From Cyanophora paradoxa CCMP329 (lineage: Eukaryota; Plantae; Glaucophyta): a stretch of 64,000 bases of DNA. The notes below the pieces were generated by a model. It worked only from the letters and a program-made list of their open reading frames with translations. It did not search any database and was not told where the DNA came from. The DNA lies in contig QPMI01000284.1 in the NCBI GenBank assembly GCA_004431415.1, forward strand, positions 224 through 64,223, read 5' to 3'. The first letter of the stretch is position 1. Each line of letters starts with the position of its first letter. Made by a program: the position numbers and the translations under genes. This document shows positions 6,486 to 17,803 of this stretch, piece after piece.

Positions 6486-7891
6486 TCAGCGGCTGCTGCC
6501 GTCCGAGGCGACGAGCCAGCGGCCCGGGACGAGGGGCAGGGCGTCGACGTGGTGGGCGCGCAGGGCCGCCCAGTGCCCGGGGCGGCGCGAGGGGCGGAGG
6601 GCGAAGGGCGGGCCGGGGGCCGGCCCCTCCTCGAAGTCGTCCGGTGTGAGGCGCGTCACCTCGAGCGCCCGCACGCCCCGCCCGTACCCGTCCCCGTCCT
6701 CCTGCACGAACCGCACCACCCGCTCCCGCCCCCCCTCGCTCCACGAGAGCACCCGCCCCGCCGGCCGCCCGATGTCTTCCCCCGCCCCGTCAATGTCGGC
6801 CGTGCGCAAAGCCGCCTGGTCGGCGCCGGGCGGGCGCACCGCTGCGGAGCTGGTAGATGGGGCTCAGGCGGTGGGGCAGCCAGGGCCCCTCCAGGCGCTC
6901 GGAGTGGTAGAGCAGCGTGTCGTAGACGTGGCGGTGGTACGCGTGCTTGGACTGCGCCGGCGCGACACGCGTCGGCGGACGGGAGAGTACGGTATGCGGT
7001 GGCTGTCACAGTGTGGGTTGCGAAGGTACCCGGACGGCGACGAACATGAACCAGCGGGCGCCGTGGCGGACGACGCTGGCGTCGACGAAGGCCTCGCCGC
7101 GGAGGAGCACGGCGGCGAGCTCCCAGCGCTCCGGGAAGGCGGCGGCCCGGTACAGCCGCACCTCCCCGCGCTCGTACGTCTCCGGGATCATGTAGCGCGC
7201 CCCGTCCTCCCCCTCGAAGACGTACGGGTACGAGAGGTGGAAGGGCTCCCTGCACCGTCGTCAGGGCCGCCCGGTGGCGGGGGCGCGGGGGCTCGTGGGC
7301 ACTGGAGAACGACGCGGAGGGGGCCCCAGGAGGTGCCCCAGTCGCTCGAGTTGGAGACGGCGATGGCGCCGCGGCGGCGGCGGCCGTCCAGCACCTCCAC
7401 GAAGAGATGCAGCGCGCCCTCTGCGTCTGGCGAGGCCGCCAGGAACGGGTCTGCCACGAAGTGCGACGTGACCGCCCCGCCCTCCACCGGCGTCCGGCAG
7501 TCCAGCGTCTGCCGTCCAACTCAGTGACTTTCGTCCAAGCACTGGGTCGTACGCACGGGCTCAATCCAGTCAGGTGGCTGGCTCTGCGTTGGGTGCCCTG
7601 AGAAATAAACCGCCACCGCCCACGACTCCGCTCCCCCGCACTGTCGAGTGGGCAGGAGGAAGAGCGCGGCGAGGAGAAGCACGATCGCAGCGGTCGCGGC
7701 CGCGAGCTGACGCGCGATGAGCGGTCTTATAGATGGCCTGAAATGCCTAAAGCGCTTCTGCAGCCCCGTGTCCTTCCAGACGCGCCAGGCGGCGTCAAAC
7801 CAACTGACGGAATATGGGTTTCAATTAACTGGGCGTGAGGGTCGGGGGTAACGGCTCGATTTGCGCACATGTCCACGTGCATCGCGCGCAT
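6486..7891 (-). CDS. Type II membrane protein made of the GINT1 N-terminal beta-propeller-like domain only (no GT64 domain)
   Basis: TM AATAAIVLLLAALFLLP followed by CGGAESWAVAVYF, HFVADPFL, EPFHLSYPYVF, YMIPET, FVDASVVRHGARWFMF, RPAGRV, QEDGDGYG, AHHVDA, WLVASDG; start codon uncertain (7891 or 7882). Confidence 0.7.
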
Positions 7892-7980
7892 CCTTAATAT
7901 GCGCAACGGGAAGGCGTCGAAGGCCAGGCCCAGCCGCCCCGGGCCCAGGAAGCGAAGGGGGTAGGGCATTAGTCGACGCC

Positions 7981-10900
7981 ATGGCGCTCTCCGCCCTTCA
8001 GGCGGCCCTGTTTCGCTTCTTTGCGAATTTGGACACCAGTCGACGCAAGCGGCACTCGAACTCGTCGTCCTCTTTCAAGACGATCGTTGAGCGCGTCTCG
8101 CTGCTATTGCTGGCGCTGTCGTACGGCGGTCTTTGCGCTTATCTGTGAGTACAGAGCGCTATTCTTCCAATTTTACGGCTCTGATGGATGCGCAGGCCCA
8201 CCCTCAATGACCTAGGCGTCGACGCGCTCGGAGCGCAGGACCTCGTGCTGGGAACCCCGGCCTCCTCCACCGGCACCTGCGCATGGATATCGCTGTTTCT
8301 TGCCGGCCTCGCTGGCTTCTCCGTATCCTTTCGTACTGTGCGCGGGTTCCCGCAATCTCGCAGCCTGGAGCTGAGCGCGTGCGCTCCTGGCAGTCGGCGA
8401 CCGCGCAGCTCGACGAATCTTGGAATTTTGGAGATCAGAACCTCGCGCGACTCCTGCGGCTGCTTCAATTTCTCTTCGTGCCCGTCTTCTCTCGCCTCCT
8501 CCGTGCGGCGGCCGCGCTCGCGGGCCCCCTGTCGAACGACGCCGCTGGTTCCGGATTCGTACTCGAGCTGCTGCTATTCTTCGCTGCGTCCCTGCTGTTC
8601 CCCCTCGCCCGAATTGCCGCGGCCCTTTGCGTGTACGACTCCGATCCCCGTTCCCGCGCCTTCGATGCCGCGCCGTATTGGACGGGATCCGTTCTGCGAC
8701 CTGCATGGGAAACCGCCGTCGTCTGCATCGTCGTGCTCGCGCGGAGCGAGGGCGCCCGCCTCGCCCTCCTCGGCGCAGCGGGCTTCGCGGTCAGCGCCTT
8801 CACGATCGCAGAGCTCCCGCACACGTCCAAGGCGCGCTCTCTTCGTGTTGCATACCCCCACTCTTATTCCCCCGTACAGGCCGCCAACGAATCGACAGCC
8901 GCGGCGGGGGCTCTCGCGGCCGCCTCGGCGGCGCACGCGCTGGCGGCGGCGGGGAGCGCGGAGCTCCGTGCCGACCCGCGCTTCTCCCTCGGCTTCCTCG
9001 CGCTTGCCTCCGGGCTCTGCGGCGTGGCGGCTGGCCTCGTGGCCTTGCGCTGGCGCGGGCCGTGGCGCTGGAGGGGGGCGGAGGCCGACCCGCGCTCGGC
9101 GTGGGCCGTGGGGCTGCGGGCGCGGGCGCTGTTGGGCCCGTCGCCCACGCCGCAGGCGGTCGACAGGGCGGAGGCCATCTACAAGCTCGGCGTCTCCCGC
9201 TTCCCCCGCTCCTTCCCGCTGCGTATCGCCTACGCCGATTTCCTGCTCGGTGCAGCCCTCTTCACACGCGTTCCGCACCCGCCCCGCCCCGCACGCGTCT
9301 GCCTCACCCCCGCCAGCCTTTCGCGACCCGAGCCACATGATGATCCGTGAGCGCCGCGGCCCGCGCCGGCCGGCGCCGCTCTGCCGCGGCTGATCACGAC
9401 GGGGCGTAGAGCTGCGGAAGGCGGCCAAGCGGGTCTCGTTCTTCGGGGAGGGGTACCGCGTGTACGCGCTGAACAAGCAGCGGATCGCGCGCATCGAGGC
9501 GGCCCTCGGCGAGTCGTCCCTCTCGTTCCAGCAGGAGCTCCGCCTCGCCCAGGCGCCCCCTTCCCCTGAGCCCCCCGCCCCGCCCACCCGCCCCGCGCGA
9601 GGGCGGCGCGCAGGGGTACCACCGGGATGCGCTGGCGCGGCTGGTGACGTTCTGGAAGGCGTGCATGCGGCACGACCTCTCTACGGCGCTGCTCCTCCGC
9701 CTCTCTGCCGCGGTCGGCACCGCTCGTCAGCGCGCCGCCCTCGTCTACCGCCGCCTCCTCGTCCGCCCCACCCTGCCCGCCCCGCCCCGCCCCGCGCCCC
9801 AAGCCCGCCCGCCCGGTGCGATCGCACACTGGCGCAGGGCCGCTTCCCGGCGTCGCGGCGGCTGCTGCAGGCCTACTCGCAGTTCCTTCTCCACGTGCAC
9901 GTGAGCTTGTCGCGCCGCTCCACGCATCTGGAGTTCTCGCCTGATCTCGGATCGGAGCAGGTCGACATCGAGAAGGCTGAGCGCGTTGCCTTCGAGGCTC
10001 GCCTGCCCCCCGCGGCCCTTCGCGGCCTCCCCTCACGATCCCCACGTTCCCCGCAGGCGGAGCAGCTGGACGACAGCTGCTACGCCGCCCCCGCCGCCGG
10101 CCACGGCGCGCCCTACTCCGTCCCCGCCCAGAACGCCGCCGGCGCCCCCGCGGCGTCCGGAGCCCGCGGCTCTCGGCGGTCGGCCTCGCTGCCGCCGACC
10201 GAGGAGGCCGGCCCGCCAGCAACTGCAGCGAGTGCAGCCGGGCCGCGGCCAGCGGCGGCCTTCGCCGTGCCTCGACCGTGCCCGTCGGCCCCGGGGCCGG
10301 TGTGGGCGGGCGGGGCCGGCCGCCGGGGGCCGGCCAGGGCCCACGGCATCGGGCGCTCGACGCGCAGGCGTCATACACCACGGACTCGAACGACGGCCGC
10401 AGCGTGCAGCACCCCTCTTCCCTGTGCGTTCCACCATCCGCCCGCGCCGGCGCGGGCGGCCGGGCGGGCGAGCGGGGGCGGGCGCGGGGGCAGGTTCTCC
10501 GGGGAGCGGGCGGCGGGGGTGCCGGGGAGCGAGAGCTTCAACGCGCTGCTCAAGGAGGAGTCGGGCAAGGGCCGCGCCCGCCGCCTCATGCGCGACTTCC
10601 GCGACTCCCTCGCCGAGGCCTCCCGCAGGCCCGCCCCCCCGCCCCCGCCCGCCTCGCCCCGCCACATCCCCGCCCCGACGCCTCTCGCCCAGCGTCGCCG
10701 TCTTCCGGCTGATGCGGCGCGTCGTGCTGCTCCTCATCGCCGCCGCCGTCCTCGTCTGGGGCTACCGCTGCGCCGTCGCGGCGGCGGCCGACCTCTGCGC
10801 GAGCGACCTGCGCCTCGCCGCCGCCGCCTCGCGCCGGGGCCGCCTCGCGCAGGAGGCGACCCTCCGCGCGCGCGCCCTCCACGCAGCCGCCGCCCTCCCC

Positions 10901-13900
10901 GCCGCCCCCTTCGACCTCAACGCGACCCGCGCCGGCCTCTGGGCCGCCGCGCGCGAGCTGGCCGCCCTCCACGCCTCCCTGCACGCCCCGGCCTCGGGCC
11001 TCGGGCTCGACGCCGTGCGCGGCGTCGCCGGCATCGAGGCGCGCGTGAGGGAGCACCTCGGCCCGGGCGCCCGCCCGCCCTTCCTCGAGCGCTCCCGGCC
11101 CCTCTTCGACCTCGGCAACAAGGTCCGTCTGCCCGCTTGCGTCGCTCGAGCCGCTTGCGGAGGCGCTGTGCAGTTCGCGCGGCGGGCGGCGGACGTGGCG
11201 GCGATGCCGGTTGCGGACCTCGCCTCCGCCCCCTCGAACCCCTACTTCCGCTTCGTCGTCGACGCCGGGCCCCGCGTGCCTGCCCCGCCCTCGCCTCCAG
11301 CCTGCCCGCCCCCGCCTCGCCCGAGAGCGCCGCCAGGCGGTGACCGAGGCGTTCGGGGCGGCGGTGGAGCTGGTGGTGCGGGGGGCGGCGGTGCGGGCGT
11401 GGCGGGAGGCCCTGCTGCTCGCTGCGGCGGCCCTGGCTGCCTGCCTCGCGCTGGCGGCCGTGCGGCGGCACCTGGTGCGGCCCCTCGTCGCCGGCCTCGA
11501 GCAGGAGCGCCGCACCGCCCTCTCCCTCTTCCTCTCCATCCCCCGCCCCGAGTCCGCGCCGCGCGCGCCTCTGGCCCCCGGGCCCCTCCGGCCCGGCTCG
11601 CCTCACGGGGCCGCAGGATGGCGCGGCTGGTGGAGTCGCTGGAGGCGGCGCTGCGGGCGCTGGAGGCCGACCTGCGCGCCTCGGCCCCCGCCGACGAGGC
11701 GGACGAGGGCGACGAGACCGATGCCGAGGCCGACCCCGAGCCGCCGGCCTCGGGGGGCCACGCGCAGGCCACACCCCCGCCCCGACGACCCCGCCGCCAC
11801 GCCTCCCGCCCGGCCCCGCCCCTCGCACCCCGGCCCTCTCCACCGATTCAGACGTGAGAACTAAGCTGTGCTCTCGCCCGCCTTCCTGGGCCGCACCGAT
11901 CGCCGCGCAGGAGGAGGCGCGGCGGCGCGGGAGCGCCGCTGGAGGAGGGCGGCGGGGCTCGACGGAGCGGGCGCTGCTGGGGAGCGGCCCGCGTGGCGGC
12001 CGGCGGCCCCGGCGCCCTCGGCGGGGGCCCTCTCGATCGAGCGGCGGAGCGCGCGGGCCTGCGGGTGGCCGGCGCCGTCCTCGCGCTCATCGCGGCCGCC
12101 ACCCTCGCGCACGCCGCCTTCGCCTCCCTCCGCGGCGCCCGCGCCGTCGCCACCGTCGCCGCCGCCTCCCAGCGGTGCCCGCCCCGCCCGCCCGCCCTGC
12201 ACGCCGGCGGCGACGGCGGCGCAGGGCGGCGACGGCGGGGCGGCTGCACATGCTCGCGGTCGAGCTCGCTGCCTTCGACGCCGCCTCATGGCCTGCCGGC
12301 CCCGAGGAGCTCCGCCTCGAGCTCGCCCGCGCCCTCGCCCCCTGGAGGCCGCCGCCCCGCGCTCGCCCCCGCGCTGGCGCGCAACGCTGCCCTCCGGCCG
12401 CTGCTCTTCGGCCGCTCGCGGAGGCCCCGCCGGAGGGGCCGGGGCGGGCCCGCTGGCGGAGTACGCAGCCCTGGAGCCGCGCCTCTCCCGCCTCGCCGAC
12501 GAGGCCGCCGCCCTCCTCGCCGCCCCAGGCACGCCCCGCGCCCGCGCCCCGCCCCGCCCCTCCACGTCGGCCTCGTCACGTGGCGGGGCGCGCAGGGGCG
12601 GCGGGGAGCCTCGGGGACGGCCGCTTCCGCACCGTGAACGAGATGGCGCCCGCGGTGGGCGAGCAGCTGCAGGCGGCGGCGGGGGCGGCCGAGGGGGAGG
12701 CGGGGCGGGAGCTGCGCCGGGCGCTGGCCGTGCAGGGCGGCCTCTTCCAGCTCTTCGCGGCGGCGGCGCTCTGCTGCTTCTGCTTCTCGCTGCTGCCGTT
12801 CCTGCAGCGGCTGCAGGGGGAGGGGGAGACGACGCTCTCGCTGCTGACGATGATCCCCTTCGAGGTGCTCCAGAGCAACGACCTCCTCCGCAAGTTCCTC
12901 TCCCGCTCCGACGTGCCCCCGCCCGCCCCCCGCCCCTCCGGCCCCGCCCCGAGCGCGAGCCTTGGGCAGAGCCTGGAGGCGGAGAGCGTCGACCGCGCCC
13001 TCGAGGAGTCCCGCCAGGAGGCCCGCGCCCCCGCCCGCCCCGCCCGCCCCGCCCCTGCGCCCCGCGGGGCCGCGAGGCGCGGCGCGGCAGACGCGGATGG
13101 TGATGGAGTCCGTCTTCGTCGCCATCCTCGTCGTCGACAGCGGCGGTCCGGGATCCCACCCCGAGAGACGCCCCTCCCCTCCATCCCCGCACTCCATTCG
13201 CCCACGCCCCCTCCCCGCAGGGAGCGTCCTCTCGGCGAACCGCGCCGCCGAGGCGACCTTCGGCTACTCGCAGAGCGAGCTCGTCGGGTGCGGCCCGCGC
13301 CGGCCGGCCCGCTCGACGCCGGGGGCCGCTGAGGGGGCCTCCCCTTCCCTCCGCGCAGGCTCCCCGTGGACCGCATCCTCCCGCCCCAGTCCCTCCCGGA
13401 CTCGGGCGCCCCGCACTCGTGCCCGCGCACCCCGCGCCCCGCGCCCCGCCGCCTCGCCCGCAGGCCTCACGCAGGGCGCGCAGGGGCCTTCTCGTCGGGC
13501 GCCGCTACGAGCTCACGGGGGTGCGCAAGGAGGGGCAGGCCTTCGCTGCCGGCGTCGCCGTCACCGAGATGCGCCGGTGCGCCCGCGCCTGCCTCCGGCC
13601 CCGCCCGCGGCGCCGGCGGCGGCCGAGGGCGCCGCAGCGGTGAGCGGCTCTCGTACATCGCGTGCGTGGAGGACATCAGCGACCGGAAGGCGGCGGAGGC
13701 GGCGCTGCGGGCGTCGGAGGAGCGGACGCGCTCCATCCTGCAGGCGGCGCAGGACGGCATCGTCACCGCCGACGCCCGCGGCATCGTCTTCCAGGCCAAC
13801 GCCGCCGCGCACGCCATGTTCGGCTACCCCGAGGGGGGCCTCCTGGGGGAGCCCCTCTCCCGCGTCGTCCCCGCCCTCGGCGCGGGGGCGCCCCTCGGCG

Positions 13901-16900
13901 AGGCCCTCGCCGCCGCCGTCGGCGCGCCCCGGCAGCTCCCCGGCCGCCGCCGCAACGGCGACTCCTTCCCCCTCGAGCTCGCCCTCTCCGCCTTCCTCTC
14001 GCCGGTGCGCAGGGCCGCCCGCCCCCCCTGCGACGCCGAGCGGGGCGGGGGCAGGGGGCCGCGGGGCGGGCCTACACGGCCGTCCTGCGCGACGTCTCCG
14101 AGCGCCTCCGCTCCGAGGCCGCCATCCGGTGCCGCCCCCGCCCCGCCGCCCCGCGGGGCCGGGACGAGGGGGCGGGGGCGGTGCAGGGAGGCGGCGCGGC
14201 AGGCGCAGGCGTCGAACGACGCGAAGCGCTCATTTTTGGCGAACATCTCGCACGAGATCCGGACGCCGCTCAACGGGATCATCGGGATGTCGCAGCTGCT
14301 GCTGGAGACGCGGCTCGAGGGGGAGCAGCGGGAGTTCGCGGGGGTCATCCAGTCGTGCGCCACCTCGCTCCTCGGCATCGTCAACGACGTCCTCGACTTC
14401 TCCAAGGCGCGCCCCGCCCCCCGCAAGTCCCTCCCGCCCTCGTTTCTCCTGATCGCGGCGCCAGATCGAGGCGGGTAAGCTGGAGCTGGAGAACATCGGT
14501 GCCGCCGCCCGCACGCCCTCCTCCAGTGCCGTCTCCTCCTTTTCGACCCGGTCCCCTCGCAGAGTTCTCGCTCTCGTCGACGCTGGAGCACATTATGGAC
14601 TGCATCTCGCTGCAGGCGGGACCCCGCTCCCGATCTCCTCCTCCTGCTCGCCAGGGCACGCGAGGGCCTCGAGCGGGCCGGCGCAGGTTTTCCAGAAGGG
14701 ATTGGACGCGTACTGCCTGTGCGACGCCGGCGTGCCCGTGAACCTCCGCGGGGACCCCCAGCGCTTGTCCCAGATCCTGCTCAACTTCCTCAGCAACTCG
14801 TTGAAGTTCACGGTCCGCGCCGCGCCCTCCTCCCCCCGCCCCTTCGCACTGGTTCGAGCGGGGCGGGGTGGCAGAAGCGGGGCCACATCGCGCTGACGGT
14901 GCACGAGGAGCGGCGCGAGGGGGACGCCGCCGTGCTGCTCTTCCGCTGCTCCGACTCGGGGCCCGGCATCAAGGCCGAGGACCGCCAGAAGCTCTTCGTC
15001 CGGTCCCTCCTCCCCGCCCCCCATGTCTTCGCCTCTCGCGGCCCCCTGATGACGGCGGCGCGGCAGCTTCTCGCAGGTCGACTCGTCCGCCTCGCGCCGC
15101 CACGAGGGCACCGGCCTCGGGGTGCGCTGCTTCGACGTTCCCCGTGCGCGCGGCCTGCCGTGAACGCGTCGGGGCAGCTGGCGATCTCCAAGGAGCTGGC
15201 CGTGCTGATGGGGGGCGACATGGGCTGCGACTCCTTCTACGGCGAGGGGAGCGTCTTCTGGTTCACCGCCCGCTTCGCCGTCGTCGCCCCGGGCTGCGCC
15301 CTCGCCCCGCTTGCCGAGCTCGGGGCCCCCGCCGAGCCGGCGTGCGAGCCGTCGCCCGTCCCCGGCCTCGAGGCGGCCGTCCTGCACCCGCACCCGCACG
15401 TCGCCGCCCTAATCCGCGCCTTCCTCGCCTCCCTCGGCATCCCTGCCGCGCCCGCCCCGCCGGGCCCCCCCGAGGACCTCCCCCGCGCCCTCGCCGCCCT
15501 CGTCGCCCAGGCCCCGCCGCCCGCCTCGCGCCGCGCCCTCGTCGCCCTCGTCGACCCGCCGGCCGACCTCGCCCCCGCCCTCGCCGCCGACCTCGCGCGC
15601 GCCTGCGCCGGCCCCCCGGGCGCGCCCCGCCTCGCCGGCATCCTCGCGGCGCCGGCGCTGCAGGACGTGCGGCCGCTGCACCGGACGATGGCGGCGGCGG
15701 CGGCGGCGGCCGCCGTCCTCCGCAAGCCCCTCACCTCGGAGAAGCTGCGCGCCGCCCTCGTCGACGCCGTCCGCCTTGCCCGCGACGCCGCCGCCCCCGC
15801 GCCCCGACCCCGCCCCGCCCCGCCCCCGCGCGACGTCCTCATCGCCGCCGCCGACGACGAGGAGGAGGATGCGGCGTCGCCCGGCCTGGAGCCGGCGCAG
15901 CTCGAGCTCGCGCCGGGCGCCCATGCCTGCTCGCCGCGGCGCGGCTGCGGGCCGCTCCCCGCGGGGGCCTTCCGGAGCCCCGCGGCACGCGCCGCGATGG
16001 AGTCCCTCGCCGACGCCTCCCGCCGCGACTGCGCCCGCGGCGCCGCCGCCGCCGCAACCGCCGCCGCGGCGGCCCGCCTCGGCGCCGCCCCGGGCCCCGC
16101 GGCGCCCACGGCGGGGGGAGAGGCGGGGCGGGGCGGGACGGGCCGGGGAGGAGGTGCCACCCGTGGACGTCGCCCGCGCCGGCGCCTTCCGCACCGGCGG
16201 AGGCTCGCCCATGCGTCCGCCCCGGCGCCCCCGCTGCCCCGCCCCGCCTCTCTCACCCGAGCCGCAGTCCTCGCCGACTCGCACGCGGCGGCGGCGCCGC
16301 AGATGCCGCACCCGTCGCCGCCCTCGGCGCGCTCGGCGCGCTCGAGCAGCGACGGGACGCCCGAGGAGGCGGGGCGGAGCGTGGGCCACGCCGCGGGCGG
16401 CTACGGCGCCCTCTCCCAGGGGTCGCGGCCGGCAAGCGGGGAGGGCGGGGCGGGCGGGGCGGGGGCGACCGAGGGCCTCCGCGTGCTCCTCGCGGAGGAC
16501 AACAAGATCAACGCGAAGGCGCGCCCCTCGCCCTCCCCCACGCGCCCGCGCCCCTCGAGCCGCCGGCGCCGACGCTGGGAGGCGGGCAGATCGCGCGGCT
16601 GATGCTGGAGAAGCTGGGGATCGGGGTGGCGGTGGCGGAGAACGGGGCGCAGGCGGTGCGGGCCTTCCTCGAGGAGGGCCCCTGGGACCTCGTCCTCATG
16701 GACTGCTCCATGCCCGTCCTCGACGGGCCCGCCCCCCGCCCGCCCCCGAGCCGGCCCCGCGCCCCCTCCGACCCTACCCGCAGGTACGCGGCGTCGCGGC
16801 AGATCCGGGAGAGGGAGGCCGAGCTCGGCGCCCCCCGCACCCCCATCATCGCCCTCACGCACGCCCCGTCCCCGCCCCCGCCCGCCCGCCCCGGCCCCGG

Positions 16901-17258
16901 CCGCAGCGCTGACGCCGGTCGGCAGGGCGCATGCCTCGCAGGAGGACCGCAAGAAGTGCCTCGAGGCGTGCATGGACGGTGCGTCGGCCGGCGCGGGCCT
17001 TGCGCGGTGGCGCTCTGACCCTCCGCAGACTTTCTCACCAAGCCCGTCCTAAAGGAGACGATGCGCTCGATGATCGTCCAGTGGGCGCCCCGCAGGGGCC
17101 CCGGCCCCGAACCCGGCCCCACCCCCCCCGAGCCGGCCCCCGCGCACCCGCAGCGGGGCCTCGGCTCTCTCGGCGCCCTCCCCGCCGCCAGCCCCTCCGC
17201 GCAGGCCGAGCCGCCCGCCGCCCGTCCCGGCACCCCGATGGAGATCCACGAGGACTAG
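7981..17258 (+). CDS. Giant multi-TM hybrid histidine kinase: TmcB/C-like TM+TPR region, 2 PAS, HisKA, HATPase, pseudo-receiver, receiver
   Basis: [26 protein letters not shown] and [20 protein letters not shown] (Tmc-like TPR); [19 protein letters not shown] and [14 protein letters not shown]; [19 protein letters not shown] (~14233); [29 protein letters not shown]; [35 protein letters not shown]. Confidence 0.9.
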
Positions 17259-17803
17259 ATATATAGCACGCTCGCGTGGGCGGCGGTAGCGCTGCCGGTG
17301 CAGCCGCTCCGTCAAGCAGATCGCGATCGAGCGCTCTTGTAGAAAGGTTGCTAAGACGGCTTATTCTCGCGATCGTTTATCGAGACAAGCAGACTTGCCC
17401 GCCACCTGTAATTTGGGCCTCGTAGGGAAGAAGGAAAAGGACAAGAAAAGGAAGCATGTTAGCGATGTCCTCTTGCATTTGTACAATTTAGTCGTCGGCA
17501 TGCACACGTGAACGCATAGCTGTGCGAATGCGACCCTTCGCATTGCAGCCGCCCCGAAAGCCCCCGCGGACGACATCCCTCGCGACCGCGCCAAACGTCC
17601 CGTGCCTAGCCGGTGATCCAGAGAGCCGCTGCCGCTCAATCCTGACCCAGCAGAGGAGCCCAGAGCACACGCTGCTGCCCCAACGGCGCGCGCGCGTAAT
17701 GATGAGACGGGATCCCATTGATTGACATCGAATGGGAGGCAGGTGAGCAGTGTTGACAGAGCACGATCGAGAGCGGCGGCAGTCCACTCGAGAGCGGTAG
17801 AGC

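What the first reader, a model, noticed from the sequence alone, without database searches (positions are those of the whole stretch)
7981..17258. TmcB/C-like membrane-TPR-PAS scaffold fused to a complete hybrid histidine kinase
Seen: an N-terminal multi-TM block, two TPR-like motifs ([22 protein letters not shown]; RRLL|[15 protein letters not shown]), two further TM-bounded helical sensor-like modules ending in the same motif ([13 protein letters not shown]; [13 protein letters not shown]), two PAS domains, intact HisKA (SHEIRTP), HATPase, a degenerate receiver (~15370-15780) and an intact receiver. Known: this N-terminal scaffold resembles Dictyostelium tiny-macrocyst TmcB/C proteins and related protist PAS and cyclase membrane proteins. 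Inference: here the scaffold drives a His-Asp phosphorelay, so it may be a class of eukaryotic two-component receptor that I do not recognise as characterised. This is the best candidate for a new system in the window.
Basis: partly seen in the sequence, partly recalled or inferred. Interest (0 to 1): 0.8.

Follow-up and report, generated by a model that had tools for sequence, protein, structure and literature searches.

The report
TmcB-like membrane scaffold fused to histidine kinase
One many-exon gene of the alga Cyanophora paradoxa joins a large membrane scaffold of the barely studied TmcB family to a complete bacterial-style sensor kinase; I found this pairing nowhere else, and it hints that TmcB-type proteins are signal receptors.

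Summary
Window 7981-17258 (+) is one intron-dense gene of Cyanophora paradoxa. A public model exists (tig00001215_g7570.t1, 2362 aa), and my own model has 38 exons and 2242 aa.

The C-terminal half is an intact hybrid histidine kinase:
- two PAS domains, HisKA with the phospho-accepting His, and HATPase with all boxes;
- a weakly supported pseudo-receiver;
- a full receiver with its Asp.

The N-terminal half has about 7 hydrophobic segments, TPR/HAT-like repeats, and a significantly duplicated TM-helical loop-TM module.

The TmcB likeness is supported by three results:
- Pfam TPR_TmcB gives 22 bits, below its 27-bit cut-off, on one exon and on the public model.
- Protein-language-model neighbours of residues 330-560 are TPR_TmcB clusters.
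- The same search on the whole 1340-aa scaffold scores 0.97 against TmcB clusters.

No relative of the scaffold's first 270 aa exists among 1.84 billion representative proteins. The nearest long kinase relatives are bacterial-type and lack the scaffold. No paper I found describes the fusion.

Single-transcript status rests on gene structure (largest internal gap 168 nt) and on the public model. That the scaffold senses and drives the kinase is inference.

Verdict: a real, apparently unique new variant of a hybrid histidine kinase, not a shown new class. The scan noted this stretch before only as the same first reading.

The parts
7981..17258 (+). Whole gene. My model has 38 exons, 37 introns of 48-168 nt and a 2242-aa product. 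It corresponds to the public model tig00001215_g7570.t1 (P0001, 2362 aa) of Cyanophora paradoxa.
   Evidence: The dynamic-programming gene model was refined by hand and with P0001's exon map. It gives a single open frame with GC3 0.94. The two models share 2159 identical residues.
7981..9100 (+). N-terminal polytopic block with about 7 hydrophobic segments (aa 35-303), over exons 7981-8144, 8196-8337, 8394-8831 and 8880-9249.
   Evidence: Kyte-Doolittle scan. The exon ends match P0001. The 48-nt stretch 8832-8879 is probably an intron (GC3 about 50%, donor AAG|GCGCGC). HMMER over 1.84 billion representatives finds only the protein itself.
9168..9996 (+). TPR/HAT-like repeat region holding the TPR_TmcB domain. 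Repeat motif 1 is at 9168-9249. The further exons are 9317-9346, 9410-9552, 9614-9760 and 9838-9996, and repeat motif 2 starts at 9838.
   Evidence: Pfam PF25474 hits exon 9614-9760 at 22.2 bits, E 1.4e-4, profile positions 34-81 of 125. It hits P0001:380-700 at 22.8 bits, E 8.9e-5, profile positions 58-101. ESM features of P0001:330-560 have TPR_TmcB clusters as nearest neighbours at 0.92.
9997..10628 (+). Low-complexity linker. Splicing here is uncertain and the two models differ.
   Evidence: GC3 is ambiguous between frames up to about 10420. Exon 10494-10628 has GC3 1.0, but the public model skips part of it (10558-10628).
10693..11560 (+). Module 1: TM (10700-10756), all-helical loop of about 180 aa, TM (11406-11462), then motif [13 protein letters not shown] (11505-11543).
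   Evidence: Hydropathy. No Pfam family. The AlphaFold single-sequence model is all-helical but has pLDDT 54. Similar to module 2.
12042..12912 (+). Module 2, a diverged copy of module 1: TM (12065-12121), helical loop of about 130 aa, TM (12739-12795), then motif [13 protein letters not shown] (12820-12858).
   Evidence: Local alignment with module 1 scores 103 against 55 +/- 8 for shuffles (z 5.7, 0 of 1000). The TM-plus-motif tails alone give z 5.1.
12970..14128 (+). Linker helix (12970-13020) and two PAS domains. PAS1 covers exons 13091-13145, 13221-13287, 13359-13418 and 13484-13576. PAS2 covers exons 13638-14004 and 14055-14128.
   Evidence: Pfam PAS_9, PAS, PAS_8 and PAS_4 each give 2 stretches on P0001, at residues 1368-1464 and 1478-1588. 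Exon 13359-13418 was taken from P0001 and checked by eye.
14187..15260 (+). Transmitter. HisKA holds the phospho-accepting His at 14251-14253 (SHEIRTP). HATPase_c has the N box (14777), G1 (DSGPGI, 14953), F box and G2 (GTGLGLAIS, 15107). It is split over 7 exons.
   Evidence: Pfam HisKA 1.1e-22 and HATPase_c 8.3e-24. Splice junctions were read by eye and recovered by the model.
15373..15780 (+). Possible pseudo-receiver. The Asp position (15553-15555) and the RKP lysine are kept. The acidic pair is replaced (HPHPH) and Thr is replaced by Ala.
   Evidence: hhalign against a receiver profile aligns 111 columns in register, with E 0.004 and probability 8%. The local HMM gives 7.5 bits on the KP motif only. 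No Pfam hit. The fold prediction is unusable.
16471..17084 (+). Complete receiver domain: acidic pair in LLAEDN (16480), phospho-accepting Asp at 16701-16703, Thr in IIALTAH, Lys in LTKP (17031). No HPt domain follows.
   Evidence: Pfam Response_reg 7.6e-21 on P0001, starting at profile position 12. Ending the exon at 16518 restores strand beta-1. A local receiver profile then matches positions 1-125 at 157.9 bits, against positions 16-125 at 132 bits for P0001.

Best explanation
This is one gene of the glaucophyte Cyanophora paradoxa. It encodes a polytopic membrane protein of about 2240 aa.

Shown: the first ~1200 aa are a TmcB/TmcC-type scaffold. It has a block of about 7 TM segments, then TPR_TmcB repeats. 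Two copies of a TM-helical loop-TM module follow.

Shown: the last ~1000 aa are a complete hybrid histidine kinase of bacterial type. It has PAS-PAS-HisKA-HATPase, a possible pseudo-receiver and a receiver.

Inferred topology: the TPR repeats and the kinase are cytosolic, and the two helical loops face outside.

Inferred mechanism:
1. A stimulus is sensed by the scaffold, either at the outside helical loops or in the membrane block.
2. The signal passes through the last TM helix and its conserved E..T.LSL..IP segment, then through the linker helix and the PAS domains, to the dimerisation (DHp) helices.
3. This sets autophosphorylation of the His in SHEIRTP.
4. The phosphate moves to the Asp of the C-terminal receiver. 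From there it would go to a separate HPt protein and a response regulator encoded elsewhere.
For: One gene:
- A single open frame runs through 38 exons with GC3 0.94. There are 37 short introns (22 GT, 15 GC donors; 35 CAG acceptors), and the largest internal gap is 168 nt.
- The scaffold-to-PAS junction is bridged by exon 12970-13020, with introns of 57 and 70 nt.
- GC falls to 0.48-0.58 only outside the gene, at 7720-7900 and 17260-17560.
- An independent public model joins the same exons.

Kinase intact: Pfam hits, all catalytic motifs and a full receiver.

TmcB likeness.

Module duplication.

Four TM segments lie between the TPR region and PAS, an even number, so both can be cytosolic.
Against: - No RNA evidence.
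- Pfam TPR_TmcB stays below its 27-bit cut-off.
- ESM 'recognition' values (1946 and 2257) are under the tool's 2300 mark, which weakens high scores.
- The helical modules match no known sensor fold, and their models have low confidence.
- Nothing shows that the scaffold, and not the PAS domains, is the sensing part.
- No HPt or response regulator lies in the window.
- No orthologue shows that the fusion is conserved.
Confidence: 0.62

Rival explanations
1. Same single gene, but the scaffold is not the sensor. It anchors, targets or clusters the kinase, for example in the flagellar or plasma membrane, with the TPR repeats as a docking platform. The two cytosolic PAS domains would sense an internal cue such as redox state, a metabolite or a gas.
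For: Two well-formed PAS domains sit directly before HisKA, the usual sensing position in bacterial relatives. A Chlamydomonas 'Tiny macrocysts protein B-related' protein is listed in a cilia protein set (PMC11244166). TPR repeats are typical protein-docking surfaces (general knowledge).
Against: The duplicated TM-loop-TM modules with a conserved post-TM motif look like receptor input modules, not a mere anchor. The PAS domains show no cofactor signature that I could recognise by eye.
Confidence: 0.22
2. The TmcB likeness is not homology. The N-terminal half would be a lineage-specific membrane protein whose generic TPR/HAT-like helices and Ala-rich composition mimic the family.
For: Pfam scores are below the gathering cut-off. 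TPR_14 also gives a weak hit on the same stretch. HMMER and the word search find no relative at all. ESM recognition values are under the tool's mark.
Against: TPR_TmcB is the best Pfam family on two different renderings of the region. It covers profile positions 34-101 in all. One of the two hits falls on an exon predicted without any knowledge of the family. The three listed ESM neighbours of the 1340-aa scaffold are TmcB/TmcC clusters of similar length, and the tool credits 17 of its 30 hits to that family set, at 0.95-0.97. Shuffled proteins reach such a score about once in 100.
Confidence: 0.1
3. Two adjacent genes, a TmcB-like membrane protein and a soluble PAS hybrid kinase, were wrongly merged by gene prediction.
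For: No RNA evidence was obtained. The public model has several local splice errors. The nearest kinase relatives lack any such N-terminus.
Against: No gap longer than 168 nt exists in the gene, and the junction introns are 57 and 70 nt with standard G|GT or G|GC donors and CAG acceptors. Unspliced, the upstream frame runs on to 13332, over the first PAS exons, so two genes would have to overlap. There is no GC dip like those at the gene's ends.
Confidence: 0.06

Closest known systems
Dictyostelium TmcB/TmcC ('tiny macrocysts' proteins; Pfam PF25474 TPR_TmcB) and their protist relatives
   Same: Large polytopic membrane proteins with the TPR_TmcB repeat region. The scaffold's nearest ESM-feature neighbours are TmcB/TmcC clusters of 1107-1701 aa, and Pfam gives TPR_TmcB as the best family.
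   Different: Those clusters show no other common Pfam domain, whereas this protein carries a full PAS-HisKA-HATPase-receiver output. The tmcB family is linked in the literature to cAMP signalling in sexual development (PMC8516963; PMC12750705), not to His-Asp phosphorelay. Sequence similarity is too low for HMMER single-sequence detection.
Bacterial PAS-containing hybrid sensor histidine kinases ('PAS domain S-box protein' type)
   Same: The PAS-PAS-HisKA-HATPase part is 31-53% identical to them, with E down to 1e-136. The catalytic motifs and the order kinase-then-receiver are the same.
   Different: None of the best 120 carries PF25474 or a comparable scaffold, and many carry an HPt domain (PF01627), which this protein lacks. 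This gene is nuclear, with 37 spliceosomal-type introns.
Plant AHK/CKI1-type and other eukaryotic hybrid histidine kinases (survey: PMC6324907)
   Same: A membrane-bound hybrid kinase that must use a separate HPt protein. There is possibly a receiver-like pseudo-domain between kinase and true receiver, as I recall for plant AHKs (from memory, not tested here).
   Different: The input is not CHASE, ethylene-binding, phytochrome or any group named in that survey. The survey text has no TPR term and counted only one HK in Cyanophora, from the old assembly.

Membership tests
Hybrid histidine kinase (two-component system) | HisKA/DHp domain with the phospho-accepting His in an H box | tested here: met
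   Pfam HisKA 1.1e-22 and 6.8e-22 on the exon ORF. SHEIRTP has its His at nt 14251-14253.
Hybrid histidine kinase (two-component system) | HATPase_c catalytic domain with N, G1, F and G2 boxes | tested here: met
   Pfam HATPase_c 8.3e-24, covering profile positions 1-108 of 111. The motifs NSLKF, DSGPGI, FVRFSQVD and GTGLGL are read in the spliced model.
Hybrid histidine kinase (two-component system) | C-terminal receiver with acidic pair, phospho-accepting Asp, Thr/Ser and Lys | tested here: met
   Pfam Response_reg 7.6e-21. With the exon ending at 16518, the local receiver profile matches positions 1-125 at 157.9 bits. The Asp is at 16701-16703.
Hybrid histidine kinase (two-component system) | Kinase and phosphotransfer activity | not testable with these tools
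   Needs autophosphorylation and HPt-transfer assays.
TmcB/TmcC family (Pfam PF25474 TPR_TmcB) | TPR_TmcB domain at or above Pfam's gathering score (27 bits) | tested here: inconclusive
   Exon 9614-9760 scores 22.2 bits and the mis-spliced public model scores 22.8 bits. Together they cover profile positions 34-101 of 125. The domain is split over four exons, and the correctly joined sequence was not sent to the tool, by rule.
TmcB/TmcC family (Pfam PF25474 TPR_TmcB) | Overall likeness of the whole large polytopic scaffold to family members | tested here: met
   ESM Atlas features of P0001:1-1340 score 0.97, 0.96 and 0.95 with 223-234 of 256 features shared. The three listed neighbours are TmcB/TmcC clusters, and the tool credits 17 of its 30 hits to that family set. 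No alignment or E-value comes with this, so it is support and not proof.
TmcB/TmcC family (Pfam PF25474 TPR_TmcB) | Detectable pairwise sequence homology to a named member (Dictyostelium TmcB or TmcC) | not tested
   No TmcB/TmcC sequence could be fetched. HMMER and word searches with the scaffold returned only the protein itself.
Receiver-like pseudo-domain between kinase and receiver | Receiver (flavodoxin-like) fold with degenerate active site | tested here: inconclusive
   hhalign aligns 111 columns in register at E 0.004 and probability 8%. The HMM gives 7.5 bits on the KP motif only. No Pfam hit. AlphaFold pLDDT is 45.

The most novel reading that the evidence does not exclude
The TmcB/TmcC scaffold is an ancient eukaryotic membrane input module. 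Cyanophora has wired it directly to a His-Asp phosphorelay. This would be the first case in which a TmcB-type protein carries a defined enzymatic output. It would define a new input class of eukaryotic histidine-kinase receptor, and by 'Rosetta stone' logic it would predict that output-less TmcB proteins in amoebae, metamonads and green algae are receptors that signal through partner enzymes.
Probability: 0.35. Interest if true: 0.65.

Novelty: new variant of a known kind. Interest (0 to 1): 0.5.

Why it matters
TmcB-family proteins occur in several eukaryotic lineages. Their biochemical role is essentially unknown beyond a genetic link to cAMP signalling in Dictyostelium sexual development.

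A natural fusion of the whole scaffold to a complete sensor kinase is a functional clue. It places the scaffold upstream of a signalling enzyme, as an input or organising module. It also offers a tractable readout, His autophosphorylation, for finding what the scaffold responds to.

The gene also adds to evidence that Cyanophora holds many more, and more varied, histidine kinases than the single one counted in the main eukaryotic survey (PMC6324907).

The limits are plain. There is one gene in one species, no orthologue, no RNA or biochemical data, and a family assignment that is well supported but not yet at curated threshold.

Tried and rejected
- Pfam on raw ORFs of the N-terminal half gave nothing. 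Only after exon modelling did one exon hit TPR_TmcB.
- HMMER over 1.84 billion representatives with the N-terminal 270 aa found only the protein itself.
- The word search on the TPR region found only self. The word search across the scaffold-PAS junction for transcript-derived fragments found only unrelated short PAS proteins.
- Pfam at relaxed E-values gave nothing credible on the TM block, either module or the pseudo-receiver. Tir_receptor_N, SdpI and NolX scored 7-16 bits and are chance.
- AlphaFold without an alignment gave pLDDT 45 for the pseudo-receiver and pLDDT 54, all-helical, for module 1. Both are too poor for a fold search, so none was run.
- tblastn of the model against the window found no paralogue. 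No second receiver domain lies in the window.
- My first gene models were wrong in places: 5' start, missed micro-exons, a missed PAS exon. They were corrected against the public model and by eye.
- Literature searches for TmcB plus kinase, PF25474, PTHR31600 and Cyanophora hybrid kinases found no description of this architecture.
- The joined spliced model was not sent to any search tool, by rule. It was used only inside local scripts (hydropathy, shuffling, a receiver profile built from fetched proteins).
Full report
**What the window is.** The stretch is very GC-rich, 70-80% in 2-kb windows. Third codon positions are close to 100% G+C in one frame, and that frame switches every 50-400 nt. 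This is the signature of a eukaryotic gene cut by many short introns. Reading the kinase region by eye gave the splice rules: donors G|GT or G|GC, acceptors CAG|, and C-rich introns of about 50-75 nt.

I wrote a small dynamic-programming gene finder using codon log-odds and splice weight matrices trained on the gene itself. It returned one open frame from the 5' region to the stop at 17256-17258.

**Organism and public model.** I ran HMMER over 1.84 billion representative proteins with the ORF piece 8439-9248, which holds the membrane block and the first TPR-like motif. It found exactly one protein, P0001, of 2362 aa. Identity was 94%, and the shortfall is a 48-nt intron that the query reads through.

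P0001 is EukProt EP00741_Cyanophora_paradoxa_P007824, gene tig00001215_g7570.t1, so the window is from the glaucophyte Cyanophora paradoxa. Earlier notes of this scan on the same genome say the same and list many histidine-kinase genes.

**The gene model.** Mapping P0001 onto the window gives 34 exons from 7981 to 17255, nearly the same as my model. Each model corrects the other.

- P0001 supplies the start at 7981, which is the first ATG after an in-frame stop, and the acceptor at 8394. It also supplies a 30-nt exon at 9317-9346 and a PAS exon at 13359-13418.
- My model removes read-through introns at 8832-8879 and 9553-9613. The second removal restores residues that extend the TPR_TmcB match.
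- My model keeps exon 10494-10628 whole.
- My model ends an exon at 16518 instead of 16482, which restores strand beta-1 of the receiver. A local receiver profile then matches positions 1-125 at 157.9 bits, against positions 16-125 at 132 bits for P0001.

The merged model has 38 exons, 2242 aa and GC3 0.94. Its 37 introns are 48-168 nt long, with 22 GT and 15 GC donors and 35 CAG acceptors. It shares 2159 identical residues with P0001. Splicing in the low-complexity linkers remains uncertain (9997-10493, 11560-11911, 12328-12596, 17084-17154).

By rule, the joined model was not sent to any search tool. Exons were searched by reference, and P0001 served as the referenceable joined proxy. The joined model was used only inside local scripts.

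**The kinase half.** Pfam on P0001 gives two PAS domains, HisKA at 1.1e-22, HATPase_c at 8.3e-24 and Response_reg at 7.6e-21. In the spliced reading all catalytic motifs are intact:
- the His in SHEIRTP (14251-14253);
- the N, G1, F and G2 boxes;
- the receiver's acidic pair, its Asp (16701-16703), Thr and Lys.

There is no HPt domain.

The stretch 15373-15780 aligns in register with a receiver profile. It keeps the Asp and Lys positions but lacks the acidic pair and the Thr. The statistics are weak, however: hhalign E 0.004 with probability 8%, an HMM score of 7.5 bits, no Pfam hit, and an AlphaFold pLDDT of 45. I call it a possible pseudo-receiver.

The nearest long relatives of the PAS-kinase part are bacterial-type PAS hybrid kinases, at 31-53% identity. 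None of the best 120 carries PF25474.

**The scaffold half.** Hydropathy shows about 7 hydrophobic segments in aa 35-303, then four more at nt 10700, 11406, 12065 and 12739. Four is an even number, so the TPR region and the PAS-kinase part can both be cytosolic, with two helical loops of about 180 and 130 aa outside.

The two TM-loop-TM units are collinearly similar beyond composition (score 103 against 55 +/- 8 for shuffles, z 5.7, 0 of 1000). This is an internal duplication.

Neither unit matches any Pfam family. A single-sequence AlphaFold model is all-helical but of low confidence.

**Is it TmcB-like?**
It hits Pfam PF25474 TPR_TmcB at 22.2 bits, E 1.4e-4, profile positions 34-81.
- P0001:380-700 hits the same family at 22.8 bits, E 8.9e-5, profile positions 58-101.
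- Both scores are under the 27-bit cut-off, but the domain is split over four exons and the public model mis-splices it.
- The ESM Atlas search on P0001:330-560 has TPR_TmcB clusters as its nearest named neighbours, at 0.92.
- For the whole scaffold P0001:1-1340, the three listed neighbours are 'TmcB/TmcC TPR repeats domain-containing protein' clusters of 1107-1701 aa, at 0.95-0.97, from Parabasalia and Preaxostyla. The tool credits 17 of its 30 hits to that family set. These clusters have no other common Pfam domain.

I take the likeness as real, with about 85-90% confidence. Formal membership is still to be confirmed.

**Is it one gene?** I have no RNA evidence. No transcript-derived fragments were in the protein collection. 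The case therefore rests on structure:
- The frame stays open through all exons.
- The largest internal gap is 168 nt.
- The junction is bridged by exon 12970-13020, with introns of 57 and 70 nt.
- Unspliced, the upstream frame would run over the first PAS exons, to 13332.
- GC dips like those flanking the gene are absent inside it.
- An independent annotation joins the same exons.

**Novelty.**
- No other protein shares the scaffold's N-terminus among 1.84 billion representatives.
- The word search on the TPR region found only self.
- The window holds no paralogue.
- The main survey of eukaryotic histidine kinases counted one HK in Cyanophora and has no TPR or TmcB group.
- The few papers that mention tmcB tie it to cAMP signalling in Dictyostelium sexual development, or list a Chlamydomonas cilia homologue.

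This is a new variant of a known kind: a hybrid histidine kinase with a new input scaffold. It is apparently a singleton. I could not survey PF25474 proteins for other outputs, so 'a class of receptors' is not shown.

**Mechanism.** The domain order is shown. The flow is inferred: a stimulus at the scaffold's outside loops or membrane block, passed through the last TM helix, the post-TM motif, the linker helix and the PAS domains to His autophosphorylation, then to the receiver Asp and a separate HPt protein.

The main rival keeps the gene but makes the scaffold an anchor or docking platform and the PAS domains the sensors.

Noticed in passing
window 7981-17258 (introns of the gene): 15 of 37 introns start with GC instead of GT. 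Introns cluster tightly at 48-77 nt and are about 50% C. The donor AAG|GCGCGC recurs at 8831, 14406 and 16518.
   Followed up: partly
window 8832-8879, 9553-9613, 10558-10628, 16483-16518: The public gene model (tig00001215_g7570.t1) has local splice errors. It reads through two introns, skips part of a high-GC3 exon, and drops the 12 codons that encode strand beta-1 and the acidic pair of the receiver.
   Followed up: yes
window 7720-7900 and 17260-17560: G+C drops to 0.48-0.58 just outside both ends of the gene, while no 120-nt window from 8200 to 17258 falls below 0.59. This is a handy marker of gene borders in this genome.
   Followed up: partly
whole window: No second receiver domain lies anywhere in the 64-kb window, so no response-regulator partner sits next to the kinase. 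No paralogue of the gene was found in the window either.
   Followed up: yes
literature versus genome: The main survey of eukaryotic histidine kinases (PMC6324907) counted one HK in Cyanophora from the 2012 assembly. This scan's notes on the same genome hold 76 entries that match 'histidine kinase', so the repertoire looks strongly under-reported.
   Followed up: no
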